This document shows, one piece after another, positions 1,371 to 60,275 of a stretch of 64,000 nucleotides of DNA. Under the pieces are notes generated by a model that saw only the letters and a list, made by a program, of their open reading frames with translations, did not search any database and was not told where the DNA came from. The stretch spans positions 124,001-188,000 of the IMG/VR virus record IMGVR_UViG_3300035703_000005. One strand, written 5' to 3'. The translations under genes were made by a program, and so were the position numbers. Numbering within the stretch: position 1 is the first letter of the stretch; each line of letters starts with the position of its first letter.

Positions 1371-1395
1371 TTATTTTGTAGAAATACTGCTAGTT

Positions 1396-2652
1396 TTATT
1401 TATTCTTTTTGCCCTTGCGGAATTTATCATAAATTGAAGTAATCTTAACTCCAGTATAACTCTTAACTTCTTGACCTGGAGTTAATGATTGAACATATTC
1501 CCTATATTCATCTGTTCCAATTTCGTGAGGATTCTCTACAAGATCTTTCAACCATGACTTAAACATTACGTCATCTTCAGTTACACAAATGACATAATTT
1601 GTTCCTCTACGAATTACCTCTCCTCTGAGTCCGGTATTCATATTTTCAACAAGATTACCAACCTCATAGATATGATCTACAAGATATGCATCTCTCATAC
1701 CTTCCTCATCGAGTTTAGGAGCTATTTCCCATACTTCAGTTCCTTCTTCAATATTCATAGATCTACGAAGGACATTAAATAATTCCTTTTTCTGCATATT
1801 ACCAAGAGTATCTGGAACACCCTTAGCAAATTTTACAAAATCTCCTTCTGCAGCCGCAAGTCTCAACTTAGATGCAGACATTCCAGTTACATCATCCGAA
1901 TCAGGATCTCTTTCTCCAGCAGAAACTACTTCAAGTTGATCATAGTTATAAAGCTCTCCATTATACTTATGACTTAAACCTTGAAATTCACCAAGTCTAT
2001 CTTGACCAACCATAATGATCATATTACTATGACCCTCTTCATTTGCGCCAGTCAATACATTGAAAATCGTCTTCGCGCCCTTATCATCAACAATACTATC
2101 CGCATAGTCTGGGAACATTTGACGCATATAAGAAATCTTCATTTGTGGAGTGAGAGGATTCTTCTTAGCGTCTTGTGAACGAGATGGATAAATTCTCAAT
2201 TCATAACCCCTCTTCTCAGCTTCCTTTGCAGCTCTCTTGAGAAGTTTTTCGTGGCCAATTGTAGGTGGATTAAATCTACCAAATACTACAACGACTCCTG
2301 GTGTTTCTGGAACTGGTTTTTCGACAGAAGGTTGTTCTTGTGAAGTTTGTTGTTCTGGTGGAACTTGTTGTTGTGTAGTTTGTTGGGTAGGTTCTTGAGT
2401 AGGAGCCTGTTGTGTTTGTGGTGCAGCTTGTGGTTGAACTGCTGCAGATTGAGGTTTAGAAGGTGAATCCTTTTGTCCAGGTATATTGTCACTACCAAAA
2501 AACTTTAATTTTCCAGATACAGTCTTAGCAACAAACTCACCATTTTTATCATACCATCCTCCATGACCGTCTCCACTCAAACCGAGTCTTTTGGCTTCGG
2601 CAGATGCAGAGGTCTCTCTAGCTTCAGTGAAAAACTGAGTGAAATTCTTCAT
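1396..2652 (-). CDS. Cytidyltransferase-like (HIGH-motif) nucleotidyltransferase
   Basis: VVVFGRFNPPTIGH, VGQDR and MSASKLR motifs; a typical cyanomyovirus gene near mazG; Q/P-rich linker after the N-terminal domain. Confidence 0.85.
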   Translation of the reverse strand: MKNFTQFFTEARETSASAEAKRLGLSGDGHGGWYDKNGEFVAKTVSGKLKFFGSDNIPGQKDSPSKPQSAAVQPQAAPQTQQAPTQEPTQQTTQQQVPPEQQTSQEQPSVEKPVPETPGVVVVFGRFNPPTIGHEKLLKRAAKEAEKRGYELRIYPSRSQDAKKNPLTPQMKISYMRQMFPDYADSIVDDKGAKTIFNVLTGANEEGHSNMIIMVGQDRLGEFQGLSHKYNGELYNYDQLEVVSAGERDPDSDDVTGMSASKLRLAAAEGDFVKFAKGVPDTLGNMQKKELFNVLRRSMNIEEGTEVWEIAPKLDEEGMRDAYLVDHIYEVGNLVENMNTGLRGEVIRRGTNYVICVTEDDVMFKSWLKDLVENPHEIGTDEYREYVQSLTPGQEVKSYTGVKITSIYDKFRKGKKNK

Positions 2653-10907: not shown

Positions 10908-11072
10908 TTATGCGCCGTCTCCACCAGCACTTGAAGAAGATCTCTTAGCACATGCTTTGCCCCCAGGTGCCATGGCATACTTAATTACTTTATAGCACTT
11001 TACTTTAGGTTTAGGAGCAGGTGATCCGAAATCTCCTTCCGCTTCGGACATAAATTGCTTAAAGGATTTCAT
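10908..11072 (-). CDS. 54-aa protein with T4-like capsid-targeting N-terminus, not in ORF track
   Basis: MKSFKQFMSEAEGDFGSPAPKPKVKCYKVIKYAMAPGGKACAKRSSSSAGGDGA; overlaps the hsp20 3' end; AAGGTG upstream. Confidence 0.7.
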   Translation of the reverse strand: MKSFKQFMSEAEGDFGSPAPKPKVKCYKVIKYAMAPGGKACAKRSSSSAGGDGA

Positions 11073-29971: not shown

Positions 29972-31366
29972 TCACATTAAGTTGGAGACCTTTACTCTTC
30001 TGTAGTAACGGTTTGCATTGAGGCGTAGTCTGCCAAGACCCTGATCGGTTCCTTCTGCAAATGGGTTTGCAACGATTCCGTAACGAGTCTTGAATCCGAT
30101 TTTTGGCTGGAAGGTGTCCTGACCAACGGCACGAACCATCTGGAGAGGAACATATGGGCAGTAGAAGATACCAGCATCGTATGCGCTAGAACCCTTATAA
30201 CCTACAACGTAGTACTGATCAGCAGCAACGTTTGCAGCATATGGGTCAATGTATACACGATACTTACCTTGGAGAACACCAGCGAAGGTGTTACCAGTGT
30301 CATCAACGTTTAGGTTAGCGTTGAGTGCAGGGGTGTAATCAAGAACACCAGCCATGGTTAGAGCGGAAGCAACGTCTGCGGAGCAGATGATGGTATTGCC
30401 CTTTCCTCTACGAGTTCTTTGTGCGATTGCGTTAGCATCACGCTCGATCTGGAAAAGTAGACCCTTGAACTTCTCAACGGACCAACGACCATTGGAGTCA
30501 ACGTCGAGGTCAAATACACCAGCGGTAGCAGTGTTAACAGCAGCACCTTGCTCAGCAACCTTATAGATGGTTCTGATGACTTCTCTGTTGATTTCAGCGA
30601 GGATCTCAGTGGAGAGAATGTTAGCAAGTTCTGCTTCTGCGTTTAGACCGTGGATTGCCTTGAGGTCTTGAGCGAGCTCTAGGGAGTACTCAGCCTTGAG
30701 GGCACGTGACTTAGCAGTTACGGTAACTTTCTCGATGCTGAATGCCATCTGGTTGAAGGCATTAGATGCAGAATCTCCAAGAGCTTCTGAATCACCAGTA
30801 GCCATACCCTGACCAACATTATATGGTGATGGGTTGGTGGTTGCAGATCCAACTGGGTTGAGAACGTTAGGATTGGTTCCATCCTGGTTGGTTGTACCGA
30901 AACCAACGAGACCATCGGAGAATCCGTTGGCAAGGTTACGGCTGTTGTTCTGACCAGAGAAGGTGGTATCTACTTCATCGAAGAAGGTCTCAGTACCAGA
31001 CTGAGAATCGTAACGGGAACGCATTGCGAAGATGAGTCCAGTAGGACCACTCATTGGCTGAACACCACAGATGTCATAAGCAATGAGGTTAGGCATTGCA
31101 CGACGAATGAGGCTGATTAGAACTGGGTCGAAACCAGCAACAGGTCCACCAGCAGTAGCGGAACCAGAGAAACCACCAGTACCAGCAGAGTTAACTGGGG
31201 AAGCTTCGCCAAGGAACTCAGCAGACTCGCGTAGTTCTCTCTCTTGGTTCTCTAGAAGTTGTGCAGTTACTGCACGTCTGTGGGAATCTTTGATGTCGCC
31301 TAGACCGTCGAAGTCTAGAACTGGAGCCCACTTCTCCATTAACATTTGTGAGTTAATTCCGTCCAT
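29972..31366 (-). CDS. gp23: Major capsid protein (gp23)
   Basis: GVQPMSGPTGLIFAMR, KSRALKAEY, YCPYVPL, GFKTRYG. Confidence 0.99.
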   Translation of the reverse strand: MDGINSQMLMEKWAPVLDFDGLGDIKDSHRRAVTAQLLENQERELRESAEFLGEASPVNSAGTGGFSGSATAGGPVAGFDPVLISLIRRAMPNLIAYDICGVQPMSGPTGLIFAMRSRYDSQSGTETFFDEVDTTFSGQNNSRNLANGFSDGLVGFGTTNQDGTNPNVLNPVGSATTNPSPYNVGQGMATGDSEALGDSASNAFNQMAFSIEKVTVTAKSRALKAEYSLELAQDLKAIHGLNAEAELANILSTEILAEINREVIRTIYKVAEQGAAVNTATAGVFDLDVDSNGRWSVEKFKGLLFQIERDANAIAQRTRRGKGNTIICSADVASALTMAGVLDYTPALNANLNVDDTGNTFAGVLQGKYRVYIDPYAANVAADQYYVVGYKGSSAYDAGIFYCPYVPLQMVRAVGQDTFQPKIGFKTRYGIVANPFAEGTDQGLGRLRLNANRYYRRVKVSNLM

Positions 31367-31426: not shown

Positions 31427-32599
31427 TCACTTTTTAGCAACGTTGGAAAGCGCGCGTAGATAAGCGTCCATAGAAGGTGAATGATTCACTTCTTGGAAAT
31501 TTGCTTCTTCTGTTAGATTTTCCGTTTCGTTTGCTGGAATACCAGCGTTTCTTGGGAAGTATGACTCCCTAAGAGTTACCAGCTTCTGGTAATAGTCATT
31601 CTCACTCTCAAACTCAACACTTTCAGAGAGGCTTGCAAGCTTGTCCTTTTGGGAAAGAGCTAGACCCTCAGAAACTTGGTTTAGAATTCTGTCAGCGGCA
31701 GATTCTGCAAGTTTCGTATTTAGAGCAATATTCTTTTGAATTTGCTCGTTGAGTTTTGTCTCCATTTCATCAAGTTTTTCTACCATGCTCTCTAGTACAT
31801 CATATTTTTCTTCAGGCATTGATACATAATGTTCTTCAAAAAGACCCTTCATACCAGCGATGAAGGACTCAGTGATCTCAGTCTTGAGACCACTTTCAAC
31901 TGCGAGAGCATTTTCTTCTAACCATTCGGATGCAACATACTCAAGATATGAGTCAACTCTTTCGGTTAGTTCTAGTTTGATCTCTTCGATCTCTTCTGCA
32001 AGAGCAGCAGCATAGTGCTCTTCCAGAGAAGATTGAATTTCTTTTGTTTTAGCGTGAAGAGCAGCTTCAAATACTAATTTTGCTTTTTCTTTGAATTCTT
32101 CGGATAACTCTTCTTCGCCGGAGAGGAGAGCATTTACGTCCTCATCAATGATAGAATTTACATCCTCTTCGACAACTTCTTCTGCATCTTCCTCAGATTC
32201 GGTTTCTTCAACCTCACCTTCTTCGTCACCTTCTTCTGCAATTATTTCTTCTTCAACTTCTTCTTCAACTTCTTCTTTCATACCACCACCTTGACCTGGG
32301 GTAGCAACGGAAGTTGCAGAAGTTGCAGCAGCATCAGGTGCAGAAGCTTTAGCATTTACAACGTCCTTAACTTGCTTAAGAGTTGCGCCAGGTGTTTTTA
32401 ACATGTTGGAATTATCATCTGGCTTGCTGTTTTCTGGAGTTGGGCCTCCAAGATCTTCCCAAGCACCAGTTTGACCAGGAGTTGCAACTGGAGTTGCGCT
32501 CTTGTGTGGTGCTTCCGGTGCAGATGCGTTAGCATTTACAGCGGTTTTGGATTGTGAAGTGCCGGTTTCCATTTCTTGTAAATTTTTACCACGGGACAT
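31427..32599 (-). CDS. gp22: Prohead core / scaffold (gp22)
   Basis: Acidic coiled coil; LSEEFKEKAKLVFEAA, VDSYLEY. Confidence 0.93.
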   Translation of the reverse strand: MSRGKNLQEMETGTSQSKTAVNANASAPEAPHKSATPVATPGQTGAWEDLGGPTPENSKPDDNSNMLKTPGATLKQVKDVVNAKASAPDAAATSATSVATPGQGGGMKEEVEEEVEEEIIAEEGDEEGEVEETESEEDAEEVVEEDVNSIIDEDVNALLSGEEELSEEFKEKAKLVFEAALHAKTKEIQSSLEEHYAAALAEEIEEIKLELTERVDSYLEYVASEWLEENALAVESGLKTEITESFIAGMKGLFEEHYVSMPEEKYDVLESMVEKLDEMETKLNEQIQKNIALNTKLAESAADRILNQVSEGLALSQKDKLASLSESVEFESENDYYQKLVTLRESYFPRNAGIPANETENLTEEANFQEVNHSPSMDAYLRALSNVAKK

Positions 32600-32646: not shown

Positions 32647-33297
32647 TTAAAGATTTGATAAAAACTCTTGGAACAGATTTAATTTCTGTTCATCAAGTCT
32701 TCTTTGATCAACAAGAGTGTTAATTCTCTTTTGAGTATTGGAAGCAAGTTGTTCACGAAGAATTCCTCCTTCCCAAACCCACTCCTTTCCTTCCATAATT
32801 CCAGATACAAATGCATCAGGAGCTGAAGGATCAGCAACAATATCTGCAGCAGTTGCAAGCATAAAATCTTCACCAACTACTTTATAACCTTCATTAGTTG
32901 TAGTTAATGAACCTACACCACGAGAAGAAACTCCTAACATTACACCTTCATCAAGAAGAGAAGATGCAATTTTGCCCATTGGAGTATTAAGAATCTGAGC
33001 TTTACCTACAAAGTTATTTCCCTCTTGAACAAGAGAAGTAATTTTGTGAGAAACACGATCGAGATTAACTGTTGGTCCATCTGGATGACCAAGCTCTCCG
33101 AGAGCACGACCCTTCGCAACAAAACTTTCATTATAACGATTTACTTCACGAGTAAGGGTTGTAATAGGATACATTCTTCCATTACGATTTTTAATTTCGC
33201 CTTGGAGAAATACTCCTTCAATATAAAGTTTTTTATCAGCACCTTTTCCTTCGGTGATAATCTTTACATTTGTTACTTCTTCGGTGATTAGTTTCAT
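32647..33297 (-). CDS. gp21: Prohead protease (gp21)
   Basis: NRNGRMYP, GELGHP, VSSRGVGS, DIVADPSAPDA. Confidence 0.97.
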   Translation of the reverse strand: MKLITEEVTNVKIITEGKGADKKLYIEGVFLQGEIKNRNGRMYPITTLTREVNRYNESFVAKGRALGELGHPDGPTVNLDRVSHKITSLVQEGNNFVGKAQILNTPMGKIASSLLDEGVMLGVSSRGVGSLTTTNEGYKVVGEDFMLATAADIVADPSAPDAFVSGIMEGKEWVWEGGILREQLASNTQKRINTLVDQRRLDEQKLNLFQEFLSNL

Positions 33298-38814: not shown

Positions 38815-39045
38815 TCACCAGTCAGGATATTCCCACAAATGGGCTGAACTTTTATTTTTCTTACTTTCTGTTATTCTTTTGATTGTGCATGTTTTACACT
38901 CATATGAATACGCAGAGGGTATTCTACCTTTACCTTTACGTGTTAAATAAAATCCATCTATAAGATCTTTAACTTCCCCACATACTCTACATTTTCTCTC
39001 TGTCAAAAATAAATGTTCTAATTCGAATTGGTTGTTGAGATCCAT
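38815..39045 (-). CDS. Small zinc-ribbon protein
   Basis: CRVC...YECKTC; start coupled to the gp17 stop (TAATG). Confidence 0.7.
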   Translation of the reverse strand: MDLNNQFELEHLFLTERKCRVCGEVKDLIDGFYLTRKGKGRIPSAYSYECKTCTIKRITESKKNKSSAHLWEYPDW

Positions 39046-40694
39046 TATCGATAATCCCACATAAAAGATCTATCGCCATACTCATCAATATGCCAACGAT
39101 CCCCATCATCATCAATAAAACTTTCACCACCATCCAAACCATCAGAAATAAAACCAAATGGAGCCATATCCTGTTCAATTTGATTTTTCTGTTCCTCATA
39201 CAATCTTTTACGAACGTCATTGTCCGTCATTTCCTTAAAATATGGTTGTGCAATTAACCACGCAAAAATTACTAAACACATTGCAAGGTCATCATTACAA
39301 CCATCTTCCGCTTCAAAAGAATTTGACTTTTGAATAAAAGTCGTTAATTCGCTTATAGTGTCGTAATCGTTAATTACCAACTTATCACTTTCAATTAATG
39401 TCTTAAGATTCATGCATCCAATCTTTTTGACATTCTTAGACATTTTTACTCCCATCTGAGACTTTTTGCCTGAGAATCCTTGGCCAACCAATTGTCCTGC
39501 ACGACCCCTCATCGTACACATAAGGACATTATCATATTCCAGATCCATGTGAAGGATTTGTCCTACCTGTTCTCCAATATCATTAACTTCTACGAGAATA
39601 TATGCCTTATTATAAGCGACTGCAAGATCTTTAATAACACTTGGAAACAACATGGGTTTTATTTGATTGTCTCTGTATTTTGCTACAAGACGATATGGAA
39701 ATGATGTTGTATCGCAAATAGTAAATGCAGAATAATCTTTTTCTACACCACGAGCTACGTCTACTGTTAAAACATAGTTATGATCTTTTTGTGGTTCTTC
39801 GTAAATATCCAATCCAGCGTTTGATTTAATAGGATCTTCATAAACTAAGGATCTGAGTTTAGCTGCAGATATAAGAGTATCAACAGACCCTAAAAATTCA
39901 CATTCAAACTCTACTTTAAACTGTTGTTCCGATGTGTTTGCAATGGTCTGAGCTTTCCACTTTTCATCCCTACCAGGAACTTCTGACCAGTGAACATCGG
40001 TTGGGATATACTCATTTTTACCCCTCTCCGCATCATGCCAGATGCGGTAGAAGTGATTCATACCCTTTGGGGTAGAAACAATCAGGACTTTTGTGCTTTG
40101 GCCTGACGAAATAGTAGGATAAACAGAGGCAAAGAATTCATCAGCAATGTGATTTGGAATGAACGCGAATTCGTCCAAAAAGATGACATTGTACGATCCG
40201 CCTCGGACAGCAGATGCAGAAGTAGATGCGGCGATAATCTTGGAACCATTTTCTAGTTCTAACGATCTTTTATTCCATGATACAATACCTTGTTGCATCC
40301 ACTTCGGCAGTTTTTCGTATGCAAACTGTAATCTACTAAGTAGGTCTTGTGCAGTGGATGCCTTGTTGGCTAGAATAGCTATGTTGACATTATCATTAAA
40401 GACCGCATAATGTAACAAATATGAAACACAAGTTGTAGATTTACCTGTCTGTCGAGGCATTCTACAAATATTAAATCTATTTTGATGGAAATTAGTGATC
40501 AACTTCTCCTGAAACGGATACATCTTAAATGGTATCTCACCATGATCCAGTGAAACAATCTTGATATAATTTTTAGCAAAATACACAGGATCATTCTTGC
40601 ACTTGATAAACTCAAGAATTTGTTCCTGTGTAAATTCTACTGGTACATTAGCCTTTTTAAGGTTTGGGTTCCCCAAATAAACTTGATCACTCAT
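39045..40694 (-). CDS. gp17: Terminase large subunit (gp17)
   Basis: PRQTGKST, LDEFAF, STPKG, DVARG, DDLAM. Confidence 0.98.
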   Translation of the reverse strand: MSDQVYLGNPNLKKANVPVEFTQEQILEFIKCKNDPVYFAKNYIKIVSLDHGEIPFKMYPFQEKLITNFHQNRFNICRMPRQTGKSTTCVSYLLHYAVFNDNVNIAILANKASTAQDLLSRLQFAYEKLPKWMQQGIVSWNKRSLELENGSKIIAASTSASAVRGGSYNVIFLDEFAFIPNHIADEFFASVYPTISSGQSTKVLIVSTPKGMNHFYRIWHDAERGKNEYIPTDVHWSEVPGRDEKWKAQTIANTSEQQFKVEFECEFLGSVDTLISAAKLRSLVYEDPIKSNAGLDIYEEPQKDHNYVLTVDVARGVEKDYSAFTICDTTSFPYRLVAKYRDNQIKPMLFPSVIKDLAVAYNKAYILVEVNDIGEQVGQILHMDLEYDNVLMCTMRGRAGQLVGQGFSGKKSQMGVKMSKNVKKIGCMNLKTLIESDKLVINDYDTISELTTFIQKSNSFEAEDGCNDDLAMCLVIFAWLIAQPYFKEMTDNDVRKRLYEEQKNQIEQDMAPFGFISDGLDGGESFIDDDGDRWHIDEYGDRSFMWDYR

Positions 40695-40697
40695 AAA

Positions 40698-40868
40698 TTA
40701 AAACTTCGCTAAACTTGCTACAACCTCTTGTTGTTTAAGATAAAGTTTAAAATAAGATTTTGCAAATTCTATTGCTTCTTCTCTATCTAATTTATCTATA
40801 ACCCTTGACTGTTGTTCATAAATCAACATCTTATTAATATCTTCAAGTTTAATTTCATCGGGGTTCAT
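40698..40868 (-). CDS. 56-aa helical protein, NblA-like; not in ORF track
   Basis: MNPDEIKLEDINKMLIYEQQSRVIDKLDREEAIEFAKSYFKLYLKQQEVVASLAKF; exactly fills the gap before gp17. Confidence 0.6.
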   Translation of the reverse strand: MNPDEIKLEDINKMLIYEQQSRVIDKLDREEAIEFAKSYFKLYLKQQEVVASLAKF

Positions 40869-40869
40869 T

Positions 40870-43065
40870 TCATTTACCTTGAATAACTACGATTGGTTTA
40901 GATGGATCGGTAGGACTTGGATACCATTGCAGTATAACTGCGCCTGGATAAAACTTTTCAATTTCCGCTTTTACTTCATCTTTAGAAGGTCTCTTCATAT
41001 TTGGGAAGAAGAGTTGAAGATTCATCATTGGTCTACCTCTCCAAGAGAAGAGTATAGTATAAACATTACCAGTAGATTGTATCCGTTGATAATCTTCGTT
41101 TGTAATTTGTCCTGGTTGAATTACGGAGTCTGCAAGAGGTAGAGAGGGTCCTGAAAGCTTCTTAAGTGCGGCATTCTTTTCGTTAGGATTAGTATTACCA
41201 GTTGCAAGATTTCGGATCTTAGCTTGTTTTTGTGCTTGTCTATGTCCAGAACCAATTTCAAAACTTACATTTTCATTTGCTGGATGCACTTTTGCAATAC
41301 TGTAAGGTTGTTCTGGAGCTAATGAGGAAGGTAGTGAGAACATTCTCCAATATCCTTCACCGTATCTACATTCAGATGCAGTTTCATTTTTTTGACATTT
41401 GGGACAATATCTAATTCCCATTTCTTCTGGAATGAACTCTTCTTTCTTCGTCTTATTTCCCCAGTTTTTTGCACCAACCTTACGACACTTAACGAGAGCG
41501 CCAGATGCATATGCAGAAGGCCAAACCTTATAACGAGATTTTACTTTTGAATAACATGCGTCCTTTTCTTCACTAACATCCAAAAATTCTTCTTTTCTAA
41601 TATCTGACTTTGTTACTGATGATGGATAAGAACTCTCTTTACTCTTAGGAACATTTGTTCCCATAATTTCTCTTCTTACTTGACCAGCATCTTTTTTCCA
41701 AAATGGATTCTTCTTAAATTCGTGTTTCTTACCCTTGGGTTGATCCCTCTTCTTTTCCATTTTCTTCTGTGCCGCAGAAAGATTGCCGTGTCTAGCATAT
41801 TCTTTCTCGCCAGGACCACCCTTCTCAAATGATTGAGTATCTGGGTTATCTACACCTAATTGTTTTCTCTTGGCCTCAGACTTTTCCTTTGGAGTATAGC
41901 CTGAAGGATTTGGATTTTTCTTGTCATCCCAAGCAACTTTACCTTCAGTCGCAACCATTTTTGCCTTACCCTTTCTATTGGGATTTGGATCTTTTTCATT
42001 CTTACGACGAAATGCTCTCTCCTCTTCCTTATCGGAGAGCTCTGTTTTCATTTTACTTGAACCGCACTTTGGTTTAGTTGTTTGTCCTGGTTGTTTTGCA
42101 CAGGGTTTCCCTGCGTATTTACCACCCAATTGAACCCAACCAGGGGTGCCATCAGAAGCGCGACTCTTAGTAAACCAGTCACGCAAAGAACTATCACCAC
42201 TTTTGTTTTCATTAATAGAATCCTCCTTCACACAGTTAGGAACGACTTTTTTGCCCTTCTTTTTCATTCCAAGTTGTTTGTATCCATCCCAGCATTTTTC
42301 ATTTAAACCTTTAATCCATTCATCTGGAGTTTTATCATGTTTTTTAACAAATGCATTATGAAGTTCTTTTGCAGTCATATCATGTTCTTTCATGATACTA
42401 CGCATTAATTTATCAATGGAGTCATAAGAAGTATCATCTAATTTTTTAAGTCTACTTTCAAGTTCTTCAACTGCATCTTCATTTATTGGTTGAGTAAAAC
42501 TTTTAAACTTATAATCACTACCTTTAATGATGTCAACAACATGTGCAAAAGTATTACCATTTGCGTCATGAAGTTCTGTCCATTCTTCCTTTACTTTCTC
42601 CATCTTTTTGAGTTTGGAGTAATAATTGGGAATTTCATCTAAATGTTGCAATGCAATATCCATTGCTTCATCATTATCTGTAGTATGTTCATGTTCAACT
42701 TTCATCCCCATCTCAAGTTGTTTTTGGATGATTGATGGAGATACTTTATGCTTTTTTGCGATTTCTTCTACTGATTTATGACCTTTGAAACCTTCTTTAA
42801 CTTCTTTCTTTCTTTCGGTATCATCTTCTCCATGAGAGAGATGATCAGCTACTGTATCAAGATACTCTGCAGCCTTTGTAATCTTTGATTGCACCCATGC
42901 TTCCAAATCACCTTCACCTTTAAGTTTAGTCATCAATCTGATGATTGCAGCCTGTGCAGTTTTAAGTTCTCCACGAGCCATAGAAAACTCAAAATCCTCC
43001 CCAAGAGGTGCGATTGTTTCTAGGTCTGCAATAATAGACCACTCTTTAAAGGTGAGTTTATCCAT
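40870..43065 (-). CDS. 731-aa multi-module protein, putative internal polyprotein
   Basis: A string of unrelated small modules (GMKVEHEHT..., KCWDGYK...PNCV, KDACYSKVK...WPSAYASG) separated by xxE sites; CTAAATA at 43090-43096. Confidence 0.8.
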   Translation of the reverse strand: MDKLTFKEWSIIADLETIAPLGEDFEFSMARGELKTAQAAIIRLMTKLKGEGDLEAWVQSKITKAAEYLDTVADHLSHGEDDTERKKEVKEGFKGHKSVEEIAKKHKVSPSIIQKQLEMGMKVEHEHTTDNDEAMDIALQHLDEIPNYYSKLKKMEKVKEEWTELHDANGNTFAHVVDIIKGSDYKFKSFTQPINEDAVEELESRLKKLDDTSYDSIDKLMRSIMKEHDMTAKELHNAFVKKHDKTPDEWIKGLNEKCWDGYKQLGMKKKGKKVVPNCVKEDSINENKSGDSSLRDWFTKSRASDGTPGWVQLGGKYAGKPCAKQPGQTTKPKCGSSKMKTELSDKEEERAFRRKNEKDPNPNRKGKAKMVATEGKVAWDDKKNPNPSGYTPKEKSEAKRKQLGVDNPDTQSFEKGGPGEKEYARHGNLSAAQKKMEKKRDQPKGKKHEFKKNPFWKKDAGQVRREIMGTNVPKSKESSYPSSVTKSDIRKEEFLDVSEEKDACYSKVKSRYKVWPSAYASGALVKCRKVGAKNWGNKTKKEEFIPEEMGIRYCPKCQKNETASECRYGEGYWRMFSLPSSLAPEQPYSIAKVHPANENVSFEIGSGHRQAQKQAKIRNLATGNTNPNEKNAALKKLSGPSLPLADSVIQPGQITNEDYQRIQSTGNVYTILFSWRGRPMMNLQLFFPNMKRPSKDEVKAEIEKFYPGAVILQWYPSPTDPSKPIVVIQGK

Positions 43066-43088: not shown

Positions 43089-43520
43089 TTATTTAGATAG
43101 ATCTGGATTCATAGAACTCTTTAAAAACTTTTGAAGTTCTGCAGTAGATCCCAGAAATACAGCATTATTAGTAACATTAGTCGGTACAGATCCTTTCTGT
43201 TCTTGATTAATATCTTTCATCTTCTTCTGAAGATCCAAAAGTTTATCCGTAACATCTCCGACATTTTTAATCAGTTGTCCAGCAACCTCATATGCTCTTG
43301 GAGAATCAGATTCTTGTGCAAGTTCTAGGATGCCATTAATTGCCTCTTGACCTTTTTCAATAATTGAATAAAGTTGACCTCTAGAATACTCATAATCTTT
43401 TTGAAGTTGATCGACAACATCAGAAGTTTTTTGTATTTCTGGTTTATCTACCTTAACTATTTCCGACTCTATTGGGGTAGTTTCGATATTTAGAGCCTTA
43501 TCAATATCTTCAAAACTCAT
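43089..43520 (-). CDS. gp16: Terminase small subunit (gp16)
   Basis: DYEYSR, PRAYEVAGQLIK, FLGSTAELQK. Confidence 0.94.
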   Translation of the reverse strand: MSFEDIDKALNIETTPIESEIVKVDKPEIQKTSDVVDQLQKDYEYSRGQLYSIIEKGQEAINGILELAQESDSPRAYEVAGQLIKNVGDVTDKLLDLQKKMKDINQEQKGSVPTNVTNNAVFLGSTAELQKFLKSSMNPDLSK

Positions 43521-46910: not shown

Positions 46911-49900
46911 TCACTCTCCCTTTAATTTTTTGATCTCTTCACGAAGTTCGTTGATTTGATCTTGTTGTGTCTTAACGGCTTCAATTAATAATGCTGTTAG
47001 GTTAGCATATGCAACAGACTTATGTCCATTTGCATCTGTTGTAACAACTTCAGGTACAACTTCTTCAATTTCTTGAGCGATTACACCAATTTCAGTTCCT
47101 GGAGTTTCGAGTCTTTCGAAAGTTACTCCACGCATGTTTAGGATCTTATCAAGAGCATCTTCAATAGTTTTAATATTCTTCTTGAATCTTGCGTCAGAGG
47201 ATGCAGTTACCGTTCCACCAAATGTAGCATTATTATTTGTAAGATCAATTTGTAGTGGCCAAACACTATTAACTTGTGTCCAAGTTTCACTATCATTTGA
47301 TCCACGAAGAACATAGAAAATATTAGAGTTGCAATGGATCATTGATACGTTATGATCCGTATCACGTAGATAAATCGTGGGCGTTGTACCTCTCAGTATC
47401 ATTGCACCTTGAACGAATCTATTATTAGTATCCGCAGTGATATTGTGAGTTGCTGCTGTATGTGTTGATGCTGTAATAGTTGCTCCAGTAATATTGCCAG
47501 AACCATCTCTAGCAACAATTGTATTTGCCGTTGCAGCAGTTGCAGAATTTAATCCATCAAGTAGATCGGCATTCAAGTTAGTAACTACTGTTGTTGAAGA
47601 AACTGTAAGTGGTGCAGTTCCAGTTGCAACTGTAGATGTTAAAGTAGTTGCTGAAAGGGCACCAACAAGAGTTAATGCACCAGCTCCGGTTAAAGTTGCA
47701 GCAAGTGTTGTACCACCATACCACTTAAATTGTTGTGAAGTTGTTGGAACACCAGACCATAATGTAGAACCATCAATACCTAATGCATAATCTGCTGCTG
47801 AACCACTAATACTATTATAGAGAACAATCTTAGTTCCAAGACTTCTTGTGGTAAACGCTGGAGCAGCAACTCCAGTTGTACCAAAAGTAATCCAATTGTT
47901 TGTAGTTCCACTAAATGTCAATTGTGCAGTCGATGTTGAACCTGCAGAAGAAAGTTCAAGTCTTCCCGCAAAAATTTGATTACTTGCATCTCTTCTTACA
48001 ATTGCATTTGCAGTGTTTGAAGTATCAGATGCATATCCATTTAATAAAGCAGCATTTAGATTTGAAACCTCAGTTGTAGAAGATACTGTGAATGGAGCGG
48101 TTCCTGTAGAAACTGTAGATGTAAATCTAGTACTTTGGAGTGCTCCAGTAAATGTTGCATTACCACCATTACCCAAAGTAAATACATCTGTTCCACTGGA
48201 GTTTCTGCCAATTAAACTAGTAGTGAACTGTAAGTAGAGATTATTGCTGGAGAATTGAATCTTGCCAGCCTTTTCACCTGTCCAAGTTCCTGTGGTAAAG
48301 GAAATATCATAACCTGTTTGAACTGCAATATCTCTGGTTGTTATAGTACCAGTAAATGTTGGAGTGGTGGTAAGGGTGTAAGCGGTTCCATTACCTAATA
48401 ACAATGATCCACTTGGAGGTAATCCTGTTAATCCAGTACCACCTCTTGTAATTGAAACAGTACCTTGGTGATTAGCCACATCTAAATGATATGAAGAGTT
48501 ATTTCCTCCAAGAGTAGCAGCATCAACATCACCACCTTGAGATGATGTCTTAATTTGAATCTGACCATCAGATCCAACATTAAATGTTGATGTTTTGAAT
48601 TGCGCAACACCAATTGTTGAGTATGTATCAATAGTTGGTAGAGCTCTATTGAGTTTAATTTCAATATTACCATAGTAAGTATTAACTCCAACCCCACCTG
48701 GAGCTAAATCCGAAGAAGTTGCACTAACTTGTACTGGTTGAGTTGTACCAAATCCTACAGAGGAAACGGCCTTTGCCCAAGCAGAGTCTCCTCTCAAGAA
48801 CGTTTCGTTATTTGCACTACCACTACCAGCAAGTCTAGTGGTATTAATAACACCAGTAATGATATTAGAGGCATCAATATCTCCACCACCGACAGCAGAC
48901 CAGTTGGAAGATAGTTGGCCAGAAGTATTAACAACAGAAGTGAAAGATACATTTTGTTTTGTGAACGAAACTATACCACTTCCACTTGTACCTAGTGATA
49001 TTTCATCTAATATTAGACCATTGATAGATGAAAGAGCACTGGATCTACTTTCATGTAAAGTAAATGAGTTTGTTGTTACAGAACCCACGAAGTAATAGAA
49101 TCCTGTAGAAATACCTGATGGTAGAGTTCCAACACCTGCAGCTGCATTAATTTGGATTGGGTCACCTTGAGTAAACCCATGATTTGTAAGTACAACTTGA
49201 TTAGTTTCTGTTGAAAATGCAACTCTTGTTAATGTCTGTGTTCCAGTACCAGAAGCACTAAGATCAATTGGTGTTGTTAACGCATAATTTGAATGAAGTG
49301 TATAGGAACTTATTCCAACTTTTTTGACATAATAAACTTCATTATCAACTAATGGAGTAACAGGAGTTCCCGAAGTGGTATATTTTACTGGATCACCATC
49401 TTCAAATGGGAAGAATGTAGTAGTAACTCTATCATTAGTAAAGTCAATATTTCCACCAACATCAATTCCTGTTCCATTAAATGAGAAACTTGTAGTTGTT
49501 CCTACATTAGTTGAAATTGCAACAGCATTTCTATCTGCAATGTAATCGGCCAATACTGGAGTTGGTGTAAATTTAGCATTATTAAGAAGATTAACGTATA
49601 ATCTAGTCTCCACACTAGCAATTTGAACTGTAAAATTAGATCCTCCACTTCTACCACCAATTGGAGTAGGATCATTAAGAGTCAATAAATCATTGACTGC
49701 AAAATAACGACCACCGGTATTGATGGCAACGGATTGAACTGTACCTGCAGCACTAACCGTAATTGTACCTGTTATTCCTGTACCAATACCACTAGCAGTG
49801 TCAAATCTTACACCAGTATAAATTCCAGCTTGAGAATATCCACTTCCTCCTGTCAGAGATTTTAGAGTTAAAGCAACACCTCTAACCAATCCAGTTGTTC

Positions 49901-52900
49901 CATAACCAACCTGAGGGAAACTTAGTCCCGCATTTGTAGTTATCCCTGTGGTTGTATTGACACCAATGTATGGAGGACGAGTAACAACCCCAGTCACCGC
50001 ACCTTGATTGAGAACACTAACTATAATGTCTCCATTTTGGAAGTTATAAACACTACTGTTATTAAGAATGATATATTGAGAATAAGTATCACTTGTAAGA
50101 ACATATGGAGATGTTGGTTCAATAACAGTATCACCATTTAGTAGACCTAAAGCGGGAATTTGGTTATGTAATTGCAATCTACCATAATTATAAGGTGTTC
50201 TGTAAAAATTAGAAACTTTAGGTGGAATTAGGTCAGCGTTGATCTGTCCAATAGCATTTAATTGAACAATAGCATTAGGAACAGCATTAGTAGATACGGA
50301 TTTATCAATAAACCCGCCAAGTCTACTATTAAGGAATGATCTTGTTGCAAGTTGAGTTGGAACTCTCCTATTCAATGGTCCACCAAGTTCATTATCACCG
50401 AGTCCAGAATCTGTAGAGAATTCTTCAATAGAAACACCACCCGAAAGTGATAGTCTAAGAGAATCGAGAGTACCAATTGTTACAGTATTGTTGAAGATAA
50501 TATTACCCGTTCTGTTGAATGCGGTAATAAAGTCTCCAATCTTGAAGTCACCAAGTTCATTGGTGCCGGATGAGAATACTCTTCCACCACGTTCAGAAAC
50601 TTGTTCAGTTCTGGCATCGGTCTTACCTCCATTTTGTGGTAGGGCATTATAATCAATACCAGATCCAGAATATTCCCAAGTATGACCAGATGAGTTAATA
50701 ATTGATGGTCTATGCCAATGTAACTTATAAGTTTCTGGAAGATTTTGAACACCTTGAATACTTTGACCTACCAAAGTAGAATCAATCTTACTATTAGTAG
50801 ACCAATATGTCGTTAATCCCGCAATAACAGTTACTGCAACACCTATTGGAGATCCGCTATGATCTGTTATATTAAGAATCGTAGTTCCATTGGAGATTGC
50901 AAAGTTTCTTCTAATGCCTTCAGAAAGTTCAACGGAAACAATCAACTCCCTTGAAGTTTGATTGTATGTGTATGCAATACCAACCGCTGTTCCACCAACA
51001 ACTGTTTGAGTAATTTCTCTACCGGAAACAAAGTTAGCTGTGCTCCCAACCCCAGCAAGAGTAAGTTTTTGATAAGAATTATGTCTGTCAAGAACTGATG
51101 ATGCAAAAAATTCAAAAGTATTTTTTTGAAATGTGTGAATACCAGTAGATACCGAAGTCAAATCAACAATTCTAGTTAATCCATCATCTTCTGCTAATCT
51201 AAACGAATTGGAATCATTATAAACAACATAATATTGGTTTCCATTAACTAATCCACCTATAATTCTGTTAGGTATAACTCCTTCATCACCAAAATAAACG
51301 ATACTATCACCATTACTGAATGGATGTGAGGTAATGTTAATAGTATCGTTTGCGATGTTTACAACTCCACCATCAGTTACTGCAGTTCCAACAAACTCTG
51401 ATGTTATTGGACTTGCTTTGAAGTTTTGAGTTACATCTTGATTCGCATTATTGAATATTCTTGCAACATAAAGATCCTGATCAGATCTTCCAAGACCAAC
51501 AACTTTTAATGTAGTTAATCCACCAGAAGTACCTGTAGCAGCAATTCTTCCCCTATCAAATCTAAAGGAATTTGGACTAAATCCGGTAGATCTGAGTGCA
51601 TATAATCCAAAGTTAGTTGCTGAGTTTGTAATAGATAGATATCCGCCGGACTGTGTTAGGGAACCATATCTACAGAAAATTTGGAAACAAGAGACAACCT
51701 GTGCATATCCATCATTAATTGTTCTCCAACCAATACCACCAAAAGAAACCATGGTGAATGCAGCTGCAACCATGGATTTACCTTGTTCAGGTTGATCACC
51801 TTCTAGTGGTATTTCAGCTTCTTGTCTAATAACAGGAATATTTGGAGTTTGTACTTTATTACCATCAACTAGAATACCATTTGCACCTAAGAAAGACAAG
51901 ATGGAACAGTTCTGAATATATGGAGATCTTGAAATAATTGGAGGATCTATTTTCGTGGCATATCCAGATCTAGATGTCAATTGATCCTGTGGGTCATCAA
52001 AAGCAACAGCATAATTCCAAGTACTTAGTGGAATACCAGCCTCGTCAACGGAATCTTTTAATGCAAATCCTGTGACATATACTCCGTTTCTGACCCTGAA
52101 CATATCCTTACCGGAGTTCAGAGGTCTAATAATGGTATTTCTCAGGTTATCACCTACAATTGCAACGTCGTCATAAAGAATAATCGGATTGTCCTCTATG
52201 TATTCTCCAGCCTCGACAAAAATGCAAATTGGTTTAGACTGTGTTTGTGGAATACTAAGTTGTGGCGCTATATTAGTGCCATATCCAACAACACTAGTAA
52301 TAATACCGACATAATTTACAAGCGCGCTTCTAACATCTGCACAATCAGTAATACCAAGATTGATTGAAGAAATTCCAGAAAGACTTCCGGTGAGTACCGC
52401 AGTAGTAAGAATTCCAACAAGAGAGTCAATCGTTGCTTGAGTATTTGCACATACCGCAGACCCTTTGTTAGTTCCGATTCCGGCATCATTTTGAATTGTT
52501 AAATCTTGGTAATTTAACTGGTTAGTTACAGCTAACTTAGAGTAATATGCAAGACTTGTAAAAGCATAACCAGATATTACCTCTTCATTAACTAATCCAT
52601 CTGTTCTAGCGACACCAGTTCCATCAAAATATTTCTTAGTTGCATAAATTATATGTTGATTTGTTCCATAGGAAATATCTTCTGCAACTGCATTAACAAT
52701 ATATCCAAGATCTCTAGCGCACTTTCTCCCACCAACAACATTAGTAGTACCAATACCTACAAAGTCTCTTACATTAAATTCTGAATTAACTAAGAAGTAA
52801 CCATAATTAGTTGTGGTTCCGATTCCAGCAGTACTGCCAGCAGAAATAACACTTGTTACAATACCAACGAGACTTGAAATTGTTGCTCTAACATTTGCAC

Positions 52901-59300: not shown

Positions 59301-60275
59301 TGATAAACTTATAGACCCAGAAACAACTTCGGAATAAGTAACTTTTACTATTGCATTACCATCAATATAAAGCCTATAATTTGGAGCACATATAGCAGAT
59401 CCACTTAGAGACATTCCTCCAAATGGATATATTATTGGTATTACCTGATTAATTACAAATTCAAAATCATCTATTTTTGGATCTATATCTTCCGATACTT
59501 GGCCATAATCGACCGCAACACCAGAAAAATAATCTACAATATTTCCGTAATCAACTACATTATCAGTTTGTATGGAAGACTCATTATAATCAAATGTAAT
59601 ACTTTCTTGTGCAGTATTTAAACTGAACAAACTACCAGATGTATTATAATTACCAATTGTGAATTTTTCTTCAGCAGAACCAGAGAATGTTGCTAATCCG
59701 TTACCAACATAAGACTTTGATTCTGACTCTAAATCTACTCCAGAAACGGAAAATAGTTGTGTATCTTCTGGAGTTTGGTATATAACTCTTGATTCCGAGA
59801 TACCAGTTATTGTGTAGAGAACGGTATCTTCTACGGGATCGATTGTAAATGACTCCAAGACCGTCTCTGCGACGGTTGTATCCAGTCGGAGTGTACCAGA
59901 AGATAAATATGCATTTACAGTCCTTTCTAGACCATTGCCTATCTCAAATACTGTGCCATTACCTACCCATGTAAATACTACATTTTCGGTAATAGTTTGA
60001 GTTGTAAATTCAAATAGTATTCCAGAAGAAACGTATTGATATGTTGCAGATTCTTGTGATGAATCTAGGGTAATTAAATTTCCATATGGAATTAATGATT
60101 CTGTAGTAGTAATCTGATACCAATCATCTTCTAAGAAATTAAATTCCGGATTACTGTCAGTTATAGATCCACTATCAACTGAAGACGTTGAGGCAGAAGT
60201 AATCGATCCATAATCTTCCTCAGAATATGGATTATTTACTTCCGGATTGTCTAGACTATAAACATAGATAGTCAT
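56388..60275 (-). CDS. Large acidic repeat-rich virion structural protein (1295 aa)
   Basis: DYG repeats; 20-aa SVEKNTESYVGxGTLTFSG repeats; structural-gene context. Confidence 0.8.
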   Translation of the reverse strand: MTIYVYSLDNPEVNNPYSEEDYGSITSASTSSVDSGSITDSNPEFNFLEDDWYQITTTESLIPYGNLITLDSSQESATYQYVSSGILFEFTTQTITENVVFTWVGNGTVFEIGNGLERTVNAYLSSGTLRLDTTVAETVLESFTIDPVEDTVLYTITGISESRVIYQTPEDTQLFSVSGVDLESESKSYVGNGLATFSGSAEEKFTIGNYNTSGSLFSLNTAQESITFDYNESSIQTDNVVDYGNIVDYFSGVAVDYGQVSEDIDPKIDDFEFVINQVIPIIYPFGGMSLSGSAICAPNYRLYIDGNAIVKVTYSEVVSGSISLSSTLTESETESYVGFGTLTFSGISVEKNTESYVGLGTLTFSGLALESYSAQTPEDVQLFVISGTSLKSETESYISSGTLFGFGNLIESITYFYNESSITEGALDYGLVSNAPELFDNYNSLSNGGPTVDFGEISVVTSSIVGELIYPFGEINYINGYSPQESYPWLPEPGVGRSWSFTRKGYEGQSALYSLSGISSNSEISNYSYFGDVATLTISGELLHPFIDYTPHYGIEKNIGIGTTGIQISGSSVEKNTESYIGLGNLTFSGVSLESYSAQTPEDIQLFVISGISVEKNTESYVGLGTLTLSGTSVEKNTESYVGFGTLTFSGVSAESDTNLYVGFGTLTFSGVSIEKNTESYVGFGTLTLSEVSVERNTESYNGTGSITLSGVSLESYSAQTPEDTQLFQISGQSLYNLNLEYRTTQTPPPITLSGQPLVHPNVDYTPHYGIEQNIGVGTTGIKFLRGVGFTPDSEGNTRDARTYSNRYPINDKVPNTGIGTITFDQTRNIAKYSPLTPYTGNGRFNIITGYSPQESYPWIPGPGVGKSWSFTKSNYNGTGVISLSGIASTREIAVYGYYGNDKNPGTSGTIFISQQTTPSIEKEIDSYIGVGTYLISGASTLKESNAYLGSGIINISGTGLESLSSQIPENVQLFNISGSSFEVYSAQTPEIEVLYVISGSIIEKTSNSYSGNGSITLNGSARSIEIPNYPSRGLIRFVNHGVDNDYDTCDNAELTCDNQYSAQVSFVVNTPENTVLFGFSGVASIKEIATYEYDETINYTIFGSYEKVSFTYSEIGVGTIFTPSSLLEQNVINYVGSGSFSTLSGSSESYSAEISESTILIQIGGSADIRIELEYSIVGIGLVNINGNSITRKISTYEQVGSGTATLSGELIHPDIIFIPSPDGLGTINIIGSSTNSLTKEYKDTFGTLFGFSSGLESFVKSTYAGVGTIYIQEISSVSIANSFQIPRTYIVII
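58141..58560 (-). repeat. Coding 60-nt tandem repeats (more copies near 59090-59290)
   Basis: GTTAAAGTACC.AATCCAACATAAGA recurs with a 60-nt period. Confidence 0.85.

What the first reader, a model, noticed from the sequence alone, without database searches (positions are those of the whole stretch)
40870..43065. 731-aa beads-on-a-string protein between gp16 and gp17
Seen: about 11 segments of 30-120 aa bounded by LGE|D, VKE|G, VKE|E, INE|D, LNE|K, INE|N, ATE|G, VSE|E, IPE|E, ANE|N and TNE|D. Several are self-contained two-Cys or four-Cys mini-domains (KCWDGY...PNCV; PCAKQ...PKC; DACY...VKCR; YCPKC...EC), and one is His/Glu-rich (VEHEHT...QHLDE). This is the clearest polyprotein candidate in the window, and each module is a potential separate effector.
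Basis: partly seen in the sequence, partly recalled or inferred. Interest (0 to 1): 0.75.

Follow-up and report, generated by a model that had tools for sequence, protein, structure and literature searches.

The report
Shuffled mini-domain virion protein of cyanophage
This 731-residue gene of a T4-like cyanophage encodes a string of small independent domains. Related proteins have been found in phage particles, and the domain junctions carry the head-protease cutting motif, so it is probably packed into the phage head and cut into mini-proteins, although no cutting has been shown.

Summary
The ORF is real: window 40870-43065, minus strand, 731 aa, between gp16 and gp17 of a 248.8-kb T4-like cyanomyovirus.

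The protein belongs to a known but uncharacterised family, phrog_727 (T4-GC119 of Sullivan 2010). Mass spectrometry found family members in virions of S-SM1 and S-SCSM1.

- **Architecture:** AlphaFold gives small confident domains joined by disordered, Lys-rich linkers (pTM 0.25). Among 267 homologues the same modules occur in 137 different orders, and some occur alone.
- **Junction motif:** In this one protein, [LIV]xE sites are no more frequent than chance (12 against 9.6±2.7). Across the family, however, 63% of module starts have [LIVM]xE within the 10 residues upstream, against 14% of random windows. [LIVM]xD and [LIVM]xK show no such excess. [LIVM]xE is the T4 gp21 cleavage motif.
- **Leader:** Several family members and at least four other ORFs of this genome start with a leader like the T4 capsid-targeting sequence MKTYQEFIAE. 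One is the homologue of a virion-detected NMNAT/cytidylyltransferase. The target has a divergent version.

My best reading is a head-internal, gp21-processed polyprotein (confidence about 0.5). Cleavage and any effector role are untested. I class it as a new variant of a known kind.

The parts
40870..43065 (-). 731-aa ORF, 83 kDa, pI 9.2. Member of phrog_727 / T4-GC119, a 'virion structural protein' family of cyanomyoviruses.
   Evidence: (phrog_727, E 1.3e-82).
42997..43065 (-). N-terminal leader, aa 1-23: MDKLTFKEWSIIADLETIAPLGE|D. It looks like a divergent capsid-targeting sequence: an F-K-E-W core, Asp where T4 has the P1 Glu, and the next LGE at 21-23.
   Evidence: (LxE|D in 46 of 54 homologues); T4 CTS from PMC8442874 and PMC9026906.
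42793..42996 (-). Module A, aa 24-91. Helical, low model confidence. It lies at internal positions in other architectures.
42586..42792 (-). Module B, aa 92-160. Pfam DUF5661, the His/Glu-rich helical domain.
   Evidence: (pLDDT 81-89).
42478..42585 (-). Module C, aa 161-196. A small beta element plus linker, ending in INE|D.
42298..42477 (-). Module D, aa 197-256. Helical domain, pLDDT 77-84.
   Evidence: (phrog_10346).
42208..42297 (-). Module E, aa 257-286. The two-Cys beta hairpin KCWDGY...PNCV.
   Evidence: preceded by [LIVM]xE in 82% of contexts.
41944..42207 (-). Module F, aa 287-374. NKSGDSSLRDWF...PCAKQ...PKC plus a helix. It is the most widespread module.
41569..41943 (-). Module G, aa 375-499. 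Lys-rich and disordered. Present in only about a quarter of the aligned homologues, and also found alone.
   Evidence: P0232, 134 aa, starts MKTYQQFMTE|A.
41425..41568 (-). Module H, aa 500-547. Two-Cys helical module DACY...WPSAYASG...VKCR, with a weak DUF5872 likeness.
   Evidence: phrog_38880, phrog_3477; 18.3 bits, below the cut-off of 27.5.
41272..41424 (-). Module I, aa 548-598. Three-Cys knuckle, YCPKC-x8-C.
   Evidence: (C554, C557 and C566 nearly invariant).
41095..41271 (-). Module J, aa 599-657. Helical. It stands alone in cyanopodovirus S-B28.
40873..41094 (-). Module K, aa 658-731. An alpha/beta C-terminal domain, pLDDT 75-85. It usually comes last, and stands alone at the same locus in S-SSM7.
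32647..33297 (-). gp21 prohead protease, the presumed processing enzyme. Its N-terminus MKLITEE is invariant in the alignment.
   Evidence: (phrog_207, E 2.5e-82).
31427..32599 (-). gp22 scaffold, used as a positive control. It has 25 [LIV]xE sites against 13.1±2.9 in shuffles.
29972..31366 (-). gp23 major capsid protein. It has FLGE|A near residues 51-54, which I take to be the counterpart of the T4 propeptide cut. The T4 site is from my memory, not from a tool.
1396..2652 (-). NMNAT/cytidylyltransferase homologue (T4-GC190), starting MKNFTQFFTE|A. The family has been found in virions of S-SM1 and S-SCSM1.
10908..11072 (-). 54-aa basic two-Cys ORF starting MKSFKQFMSE|A, a strict match to the T4 capsid-targeting pattern.

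Best explanation
The gene encodes a precursor that is built into the prohead core and cut by the phage's gp21 prohead protease at [L/I/V/M]-x-Glu junctions. This would release up to about eleven mini-proteins of 2.6-14 kDa that stay in the DNA-filled head.

Shown here:
- The string-of-domains architecture.
- Permutation of module order across the family.
- Enrichment of the junction motif across the family.
- T4-type leaders on part of the family and on other ORFs of this genome.
- gp21, gp22 and gp23 encoded in the same window.

Taken from the literature:
- Orthologues are virion proteins.
- T4 gp21 cuts after L/I-x-E.
- The ten N-terminal residues MKTYQEFIAE target T4 internal proteins into the head.

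Inferred:
- The target's divergent leader (MDKLTFKEWSIIAD...LGE|D) targets it to the scaffold core.
- Cleavage really occurs at the junctions.
- The fragments leave with the DNA on infection and act in the host.
For: 1. Family and virion presence. The protein matches phrog_727 at E 1.3e-82. The S-SM2 and S-SM1 orthologues are annotated T4-GC119. Table S8 of PMC3037559 lists T4-GC119 as a structural protein detected in S-SM1 virions with 13 peptide counts. S-SCSM1 ORF29 shares modules F, H, E, I and K (BLASTP E 9e-41) and is annotated as a virion protein from mass spectrometry.

2. Architecture. AF2 gives pTM 0.25 with six confident small domains and long disordered linkers.

3. Shuffling. There are 137 module orders among 267 homologues. 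The family has 7577 clusters at 50% identity.

4. Junction motif.
- [LIVM]xE occurs within 10 aa upstream of module cores in 63% of 472 distinct contexts, against 14% of random windows. [LIVM]xD is 7% against 8%, and [LIVM]xK is 11% against 17%.
- The motif persists when the upstream neighbour and sequence differ.
- Its frequency is about 3 times higher at BLAST homology breakpoints, while D and K controls stay flat.
- Family-wide, the count is 1318 against 944±27 in shuffles.
- Most junctions of the virion-detected S-SCSM1 and S-SM1 proteins carry the motif, read by eye.

5. Leaders.
- 8 of 151 representatives start with ^M..[FYW]..[FYW][LIVM].E (shuffles give 0.01), for example MKTYQQFMTE|A. 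22 of 151 match a relaxed pattern (shuffles give 0.22), and these include the target's clade.
- Three ORFs of this genome match the strict pattern, and the NMNAT homologue matches a looser one.
- The NMNAT/cytidylyltransferase, an enzyme found in virions of two phages, starts MKSFLQFLKE|A or MKSFFQFLSE|A.

6. Machinery. gp21, gp22 (with a [LIV]xE excess) and gp23 (FLGE|A) are in the window.

7. T4 rules. These come from PMC9026906 and PMC8442874. They include the finding that Asp at CTS position 10 blocks cutting but not targeting, which fits the target's ...IIAD followed by LGE.
Against: - No cleavage product, N-terminus or semi-specific peptide is available for any family member.
- In this protein the site count is at chance.
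- ATE|G, ANE|N and TNE|D have A or T at P3. Modules A, H, J and K show weaker enrichment (33-50%).
- Most family members (126 of 148) have no recognisable leader, and this includes the two virion-detected proteins.
- The target's own leader is only a relaxed match.
- Syn9 has the gene, but no peptides were detected in its virions.
- Module instances are phylogenetically related, so the statistics overstate independence. Ex[LIVM] is also somewhat enriched (1.23 times).
- The motif could be a structural cap of the modules.
- The gp21-peptide complex prediction gave no answer.
Confidence: 0.5

Rival explanations
1. It is an intact multidomain virion protein, for example a head-internal, decoration or neck-associated accessory. 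It is not cleaved. The [LIVM]xE residues are structural caps or linker features that travel with each module.
For: Virion detection of orthologues says nothing about processing. The site count in this protein is at chance. Most members lack a leader. Ex[LIVM] is also enriched, which suggests that secondary-structure periodicity contributes.
Against: The same tripeptide class precedes at least six unrelated modules, in contexts whose other upstream residues are not conserved. Glu is specifically preferred over Asp, Lys or Gln. T4-type leaders occur in the family. There is no predicted inter-domain packing.
Confidence: 0.3
2. It is a packaging or assembly accessory, tied to the terminase genes that flank it. 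It would act transiently with the portal, terminase or scaffold through the conserved C-terminal K domain, and would not be a cargo protein.
For: The position between gp16 and gp17 is conserved in many cyanomyoviruses. The K domain alone keeps this position in S-SSM7. K is usually the last module.
Against: The gp16-gp17 interval is a known hyperplastic region holding unrelated genes such as petE and PTOX (PMC3037559). In S-SSM7 the large family member lies elsewhere. S-SM1's virion-detected member has no K or A module. Extreme variability is unlike an essential assembly factor.
Confidence: 0.12
3. It is a non-virion mosaic protein made by recombination in a hyperplastic region, with no assembly role in this phage. 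The junction motif and leader would be relics.
For: Variability is very high, the modules have no known function, and Syn9 virions gave no peptides.
Against: The ORF is long and intact. Its close relatives are 60-95% identical, with many invariant columns. Two independent virion proteomes detected members of the family.
Confidence: 0.05

Closest known systems
T4-GC119 / phrog_727, 'virion structural protein' of T4-like cyanophages (Sullivan et al. 2010, PMC3037559)
   Same: Strong HMM match, the same locus between gp16 and gp17, highly variable gene size (276-2985 nt in 15 of 16 cyanomyoviruses), and virion detection in S-SM1.
   Different: Nothing: it is a member. The family has no assigned function. 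I found no published description of its modular, permuted architecture, its junction motif or its leaders.
[quoted passage not shown]
   Same: Both come from a T4-like phage with gp21 and gp22. Both have an N-terminal leader with an aromatic-x-x-aromatic core followed by [LIV]-x-E; this is strict in part of the family and divergent in the target. Both are basic and hypervariable between related phages.
   Different: There is no sequence homology beyond the leader. The IPs are single proteins cut once, whereas this protein has about eleven candidate sites between shuffled mini-domains. Cleavage and ejection are not shown here.
T4 prohead core proteins gp22, gp67 and gp68 (cut into several fragments by gp21)
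   Same: Multiple L/I-x-E sites in one polypeptide, and small internal peptides as products.
   Different: Those are scaffold components whose fragments mostly leave the head. This protein consists of folded, Cys-containing mini-domains and is not a coiled-coil scaffold.
Inner-body and ejection proteins of phiKZ, 201phi2-1 and SPN3US (cut after S/A-x-E by a gp21-like protease)
   Same: Many head-internal proteins with several cleavage sites after Glu, and families of paralogues.
   Different: Different phage lineage and motif, and no homology. Those are separate genes with propeptides, not a permuted string of mini-domains.
Pfam DUF5661, with weaker likeness to DUF5872
   Same: Residues 100-157 match DUF5661 above the gathering score. 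Residues 506-538 resemble DUF5872.
   Different: Both are domains of unknown function. The DUF5872 match is below the cut-off.

Membership tests
phrog_727 / T4-GC119 cyanomyovirus virion protein | Significant profile match | tested here: met
   phrog_727 E 1.3e-82, two stretches. tblastn finds 382 phage records, nearly all cyanophages.
phrog_727 / T4-GC119 cyanomyovirus virion protein | Locus between gp16 and gp17 | tested here: met
   The same position holds in DSL-LC02, S-SM2, S-RIM2, S-SM1, S-SCSM1 and RB11-B.
phrog_727 / T4-GC119 cyanomyovirus virion protein | Presence in purified virions | not testable with these tools
   Shown only for orthologues: S-SM1 with 13 peptide counts, and S-SCSM1 ORF29.
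T4-type internal head proteins (CTS-targeted gp21 substrates) | N-terminal capsid-targeting sequence of about 10 aa (aromatic at 4 and 7, L/I at 8, Glu at 10) | tested here: inconclusive
   The target matches only a relaxed pattern (F6, W9, I11-I12, Asp14, then LGE 21-23). The strict pattern is found in 8 of 151 family representatives and in 3 other ORFs of this genome.
T4-type internal head proteins (CTS-targeted gp21 substrates) | Phage encodes a gp21-type prohead protease and a gp22 scaffold | tested here: met
   phrog_207 E 2.5e-82 and phrog_237 E 1.9e-98.
T4-type internal head proteins (CTS-targeted gp21 substrates) | Cleavage after L/I-x-E by gp21 | not testable with these tools
   Only motif position and enrichment could be tested. 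The complex prediction gave no answer.
T4-type internal head proteins (CTS-targeted gp21 substrates) | Sequence homology to IPI, IPII or IPIII | tested here: not met
   No Pfam or PHROG internal-head-protein family appeared among the hits.
Proteolytically processed polyprotein | Several independently folding units in one chain | tested here: met
   AF2 domains with pTM 0.25. Module order is permuted and modules occur alone.
Proteolytically processed polyprotein | Protease recognition sites at the unit boundaries | tested here: met
   63% against 14% for [LIVM]xE upstream of module starts, with flat controls. 8 of the target's 11 junctions have L/I/V at P3.
Proteolytically processed polyprotein | Mature products observed | not testable with these tools
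   No peptide-level data were held for S-SM1 or S-SCSM1.
Pfam DUF5661 | Score above the gathering threshold | tested here: met
   49.7 bits against 27, residues 100-157.
Pfam DUF5872 | Score above the gathering threshold | tested here: not met
   18.3 bits against 27.5, and only 32 of 116 profile positions matched.

The most novel reading that the evidence does not exclude
T4-like cyanophages, and some other marine myophages, carry a cassette library of capsid-packaged mini-proteins. Small Cys-stapled domains are strung together in ever-changing orders. They are targeted to the prohead by a T4-type leader, released from each other by gp21 at [LIVM]xE junctions, and injected with the DNA as a fast-evolving set of anti-defence or host-takeover effectors. 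The same leader would also explain why enzymes such as NMNAT travel inside virions.
Probability: 0.2. Interest if true: 0.85.

Novelty: new variant of a known kind. Interest (0 to 1): 0.66.

Why it matters
T4-like cyanophages are among the most abundant viruses in the sea. Their genomes were thought to lack counterparts of the T4 internal proteins, and many of their virion proteins have no assigned role.

If this family is a protease-processed polyprotein of packaged mini-domains, three things follow:
- It identifies the cyanophage equivalent of the T4 internal-protein system.
- It gives a simple sequence rule, a leader plus [LIVM]xE junctions, for predicting which proteins travel inside the capsid. 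That includes metabolic enzymes such as NMNAT.
- It points to a very large, rapidly shuffling pool of candidate injected proteins (more than 7500 clusters at 50% identity) that may act against host defences.

The idea can be tested directly by re-searching existing virion proteomes with semi-specific cleavage.

Tried and rejected
- **Simple enrichment in the target.** [LIV]xE sites number 12 against 9.6±2.7 in shuffles, so the count is not significant. The count alone cannot carry the claim.
- **Each module has its own full internal leader.** I suspected this from KFKSFTQPINE|D. Only 19 of 285 internal junctions show the aromatic pattern, against 45 of 869 control sites, so I rejected it.
- **Paralogy inside the genome.** BLASTP of the target against all ORFs found no clear paralogue. 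The link to the 773-aa protein is only through shared PHROG profiles and modules seen in other phages.
- **Fold and family searches.**
  - Foldseek against the PDB gave no hit with E below 0.9.
  - Two ESM Atlas feature searches gave only uncharacterised viral clusters.
  - A per-module Pfam scan at E up to 10 gave nothing beyond DUF5661 and a weak DUF5872 match.
- **Complex prediction.** gp21 with residues 268-300 returned 'no answer', which is not evidence either way.
- **DNA repeats and signals.** No meaningful DNA repeats, promoters or terminators were found in or around the gene.
- **First structure job.** I repeated it without them.
- **Peptide-level data.** The supplements held for the S-SCSM1 paper had no peptide-level data.
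- **Literature.** Searches for a capsid-targeting sequence or internal proteins in cyanophages found nothing relevant, and DUF5661 appears in no paper in the held library.
Full report
**What is in the sequence**

The window is part of a 248,835-bp T4-like cyanomyovirus genome; the window is G000:C1:124001-188000. The reported ORF is real: 40870..43065 on the minus strand, ATG start, 731 aa.

Its neighbours are the T4 late module, all on the minus strand:
- gp13, gp14 and gp15 (by position and by synteny with annotated cyanophages; I did not scan these three);
- gp16, the small terminase, at 43089..43520;
- the target;
- a 56-aa ORF at 40698..40868 (phrog_27081);
- gp17, the large terminase, at 39045..40694;
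- an endonuclease VII-like gene;
- gp18 and gp19;
- gp20, the portal;
- gp21, the prohead protease, at 32647..33297;
- gp22, the scaffold;
- gp23, the major capsid protein.

So are the Cys pairs C258/C278, C322/C334 and C504/C527. The last Cys module has three cysteines (554, 557, 566), not four. The His/Glu-rich piece is Pfam DUF5661. The protein is 83 kDa with pI 9.2 and 14% Lys.

**Is it more than chance?**

Taken alone, no. The protein has 12 [LIV]xE tripeptides, and shuffles give 9.6±2.7. The density of 1.6 per 100 aa matches gp17, gp18 and gp20. The scaffold gp22, a true multi-site substrate of gp21 in T4, has 25 against 13.1±2.9.

The position of the sites is another matter. In the AlphaFold2 model (51-sequence alignment, mean pLDDT 55, pTM 0.25), confident small domains lie at 100-155, 195-255, 256-280, 501-535, 551-580 and 650-725. 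Residues 348-501 are disordered. All eleven named sites lie in coil or at the very ends of helices or strands. The tool does not return PAE, so domain independence rests on the low pTM and the disordered linkers.

**What family it is**

The protein matches phrog_727 (E 1.3e-82) and, through single modules, several other PHROGs of unknown function. tblastn finds it in 382 phage records, almost all Synechococcus or Prochlorococcus myoviruses. No record covers 80% of the query. In DSL-LC02, S-SM2, S-RIM2, S-SM1, S-SCSM1 and RB11-B the homologue sits in the same gp16-gp17 interval.

The S-SM2 and S-SM1 genes are annotated T4-GC119. In Sullivan et al. 2010 (PMC3037559, Table S8), T4-GC119 is a 'Structural protein':
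- it was detected in purified S-SM1 virions with 13 peptide counts;
- it is present in 15 of 16 cyanomyovirus genomes, at sizes from 276 to 2985 nt;
- it is absent from S-PM2;
- it is present but undetected in Syn9.

S-SCSM1 ORF29 shares modules F, H, E, I and K with the target (BLASTP E 9e-41). It is annotated as a virion protein on the basis of the mass spectrometry in PMC9602691. So the family is known and virion-associated, but it has no assigned function.

**The beads are real and are shuffled**

An exhaustive HMMER search found 7577 clusters at 50% identity with E of 0.001 or better. I cut the query into modules A to K, using conservation, insertion hot spots and the model, and mapped them onto 267 homologues. 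The modules occur in 137 different orders, for example ABCEFHIJK, BFHIAE, FHEK and BIAEFHK. K is usually last, and A is often internal.

Order also differs among complete phage genomes. Module A is internal in DSL-LC02 and S-SM2. S-SM1 has the order X-I-F-G'-H-E-DUF6321.

Modules also stand alone:
- an 83-aa gene between gp16 and gp17 of S-SSM7 is a leader plus K;
- a 77-aa gene of the podovirus S-B28 is module J;
- short metagenomic proteins carry F+H, F+E or G only, though some of those may be fragments.

Module A also occurs in an 841-aa protein of Flavobacterium phage immuto.

**Junctions carry the gp21 motif**

T4 gp21 cuts after Glu in the short motif L/I-x-E. It cuts gp22, gp67 and gp68 into several pieces (PMC9026906).

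I took representatives no more than 50% identical to each other and collected 472 distinct module-start contexts.
- 63% have [LIVM]xE within the ten residues upstream of the module core, against 14% of random ten-residue windows from the same proteins.
- [LIVM]xD (7% against 8%), [LIVM]xK (11% against 17%) and [LIVM]x[QN] (7% against 9%) are not enriched.
- The excess is strongest for modules B, D, E, F and I (66-89%). It is weaker for A, H, K and J.

The motif stays when the upstream neighbour and the rest of the upstream sequence differ. Examples are ...IEE|KCW...VQE|KCW...LTE|KCW and ...VDE|ACW before module E, and ...VLE|GNK and ...ISE|KNK before module F.

A test that does not use my module borders agrees. 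At BLAST homology breakpoints among the representatives, the [LIVM]xE frequency rises from about 0.015 to 0.045, while the D and K controls stay flat. Family-wide, the motif count is 1318 against 944±27 in shuffles. The ratio is 1.40, against 1.10 for xD, 1.04 for xK and 1.23 for Ex[LIVM].

In the two virion-detected proteins, most junctions read [LIVF]xE. The junction logo is P3 V>I>L>M, P1 E, acidic residues at P5 and P6, and E, K, A or G at P1'.

The instances are phylogenetically related, so these numbers overstate independence.

**T4-type leaders**

The T4 capsid-targeting sequence (CTS) is MKTYQEFIAE. Residues 4 and 7 matter for targeting and residues 8 and 10 for cutting. Asp at position 10 blocks cutting but not targeting (PMC8442874, PMC9026906).

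In the family:
- Eight of 151 representatives start with ^M..[FYW]..[FYW][LIVM].E, where shuffles give 0.01. Examples are MKTYQQFMTE|A (before a lone G module), MKTFSQFLLE|A and MKTFADFINE|S.
- 22 of 151 fit a relaxed pattern, where shuffles give 0.22.
- The target clade's conserved MDKLTFKEWSIIAD...LGE|D is one of the relaxed matches. It resembles the family member MSVVSFKEFVIAE|A.

In this genome, three other ORFs fit the strict pattern, out of 820 scanned:
- a 54-aa ORF at window 10908..11072;
- a very basic 185-aa ORF outside the window;
- a 104-aa ORF with a K-like domain, just outside the window start.

The NMNAT/cytidylyltransferase homologue (window 1396..2652) starts MKNFTQFFTE|A. It lies next to a second mosaic protein of 773 aa, which starts MASWEEFSRIVAE|A, carries DUF6321 and DUF3008, and also hits phrog_727.

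The NMNAT/cytidylyltransferase family serves as a natural control. It is an enzyme, yet it was found in S-SM1 virions (T4-GC190, 25 counts) and in S-SCSM1 virions (ORF91). In S-SCSM1 and S-SM2 it starts MKSFLQFLKE|A and MKSFFQFLSE|A.

A gene of about 105 aa starting MKS[FY]xQF[LM]xE|S follows the T4-GC119 gene in S-SCSM1, S-RIM2, DSL-LC02 and RB11-B.

**Most likely mechanism**

The protein is taken into the prohead core and cut by gp21 at the module junctions. The resulting mini-proteins of 2.6-14 kDa, several of them basic and Cys-stapled, stay with the DNA. This combines the T4 internal-protein system (leader plus one cut) with the multi-site cutting of the T4 core proteins.

I put this at about 0.5. 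The main rival is an uncleaved virion protein whose junction residues are structural (0.3).

The points against are:
- no cleavage data exist;
- the leader match for the target itself is only relaxed;
- most members, including the two virion-detected ones, have no leader;
- three of the eleven sites have A or T at P3;
- Syn9 virions gave no peptides.

**Function of the modules**

This is unknown. Foldseek against the PDB, two ESM Atlas searches and per-module Pfam scans gave nothing characterised. 'Effector' is a hypothesis only. It rests on the analogy with T4 IPI and on the extreme shuffling.

**Novelty**

The family and its virion association are published. In the held library I found no paper describing its permuted mini-domain architecture, the junction motif or T4-type leaders in cyanophages. 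Subscription journals are not covered. I class it as a new variant of a known kind: gp21-processed, head-internal proteins of T4-like phages.

Noticed in passing
window 1-2652 (-) and genome G000:C1:122735-126652 (L007): Three consecutive genes all start with a T4 CTS-like leader. They are the NMNAT/cytidylyltransferase homologue (window 1396..2652, MKNFTQFFTE|A), a 773-aa Lys/Glu-rich mosaic protein cut by the window start (MASWEEFSRIVAE|A; DUF6321 and DUF3008; also hits phrog_727), and a 104-aa phrog_1742 protein with a K-like domain (MKSFKQFLSE|S). This looks like a cluster of capsid-cargo genes.
   Followed up: partly
window 10908-11072 (-): A 54-aa basic two-Cys ORF starts MKSFKQFMSE|A, a strict match to the T4 capsid-targeting pattern. 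It is a candidate small internal protein.
   Followed up: partly
genome G000:C1:221169-221726 (-), outside the window: A 185-aa, very basic, low-complexity ORF starts MKTFKQFLHE|A. In composition it resembles the T4 internal proteins.
   Followed up: no
window 32647-33297 (-): The gp21 prohead protease starts with MKLITEE, invariant in 28 aligned homologues. This gives an I-T-E motif at residues 4-6 and recalls the LIE motif near the N-terminus of T4 gp21, which has been discussed as a possible autocleavage site.
   Followed up: no
window 31427-32599 (-): The N-terminal third of the gp22 scaffold contains two copies of an Ala/Pro/Thr-rich stretch (…ASAPEAPHKSATPVATPGQTG… and …ASAPDAAATSATSVATPGQGG…), followed by a long poly-acidic run. 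The 30-32 kb segment has the highest G+C in the window (0.458).
   Followed up: no
window 40698-40868 (-): A 56-aa ORF (phrog_27081, E 4.5e-14) fills the gap between the target and gp17. Its function is unknown.
   Followed up: no
window 38815-39060 (-): An 81-aa endonuclease VII-like gene (phrog_4723) lies directly after gp17. This is the position where Sullivan et al. describe relic homing endonucleases (T4-GC282).
   Followed up: no
window 46911-56339 (-) and 56388-60275 (-): Two giant ORFs of 3142 aa and 1295 aa lie upstream of the neck genes. The larger is full of Gly/Thr/Ser/Ile-rich repeats and ends in a segment that looks by eye like an intramolecular-chaperone tail. Both are probably fibre or baseplate proteins.
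   Followed up: no
L009:2396-4921 (Flavobacterium phage vB_FspM_immuto_3-5A): An 841-aa hypothetical protein upstream of the large terminase carries module A (preceded by LNE|D). It also carries the 'LDPVGKED...DNDG...KYL.NRR' motif found in the 773-aa protein of this genome. The module network therefore reaches beyond cyanophages.
   Followed up: partly
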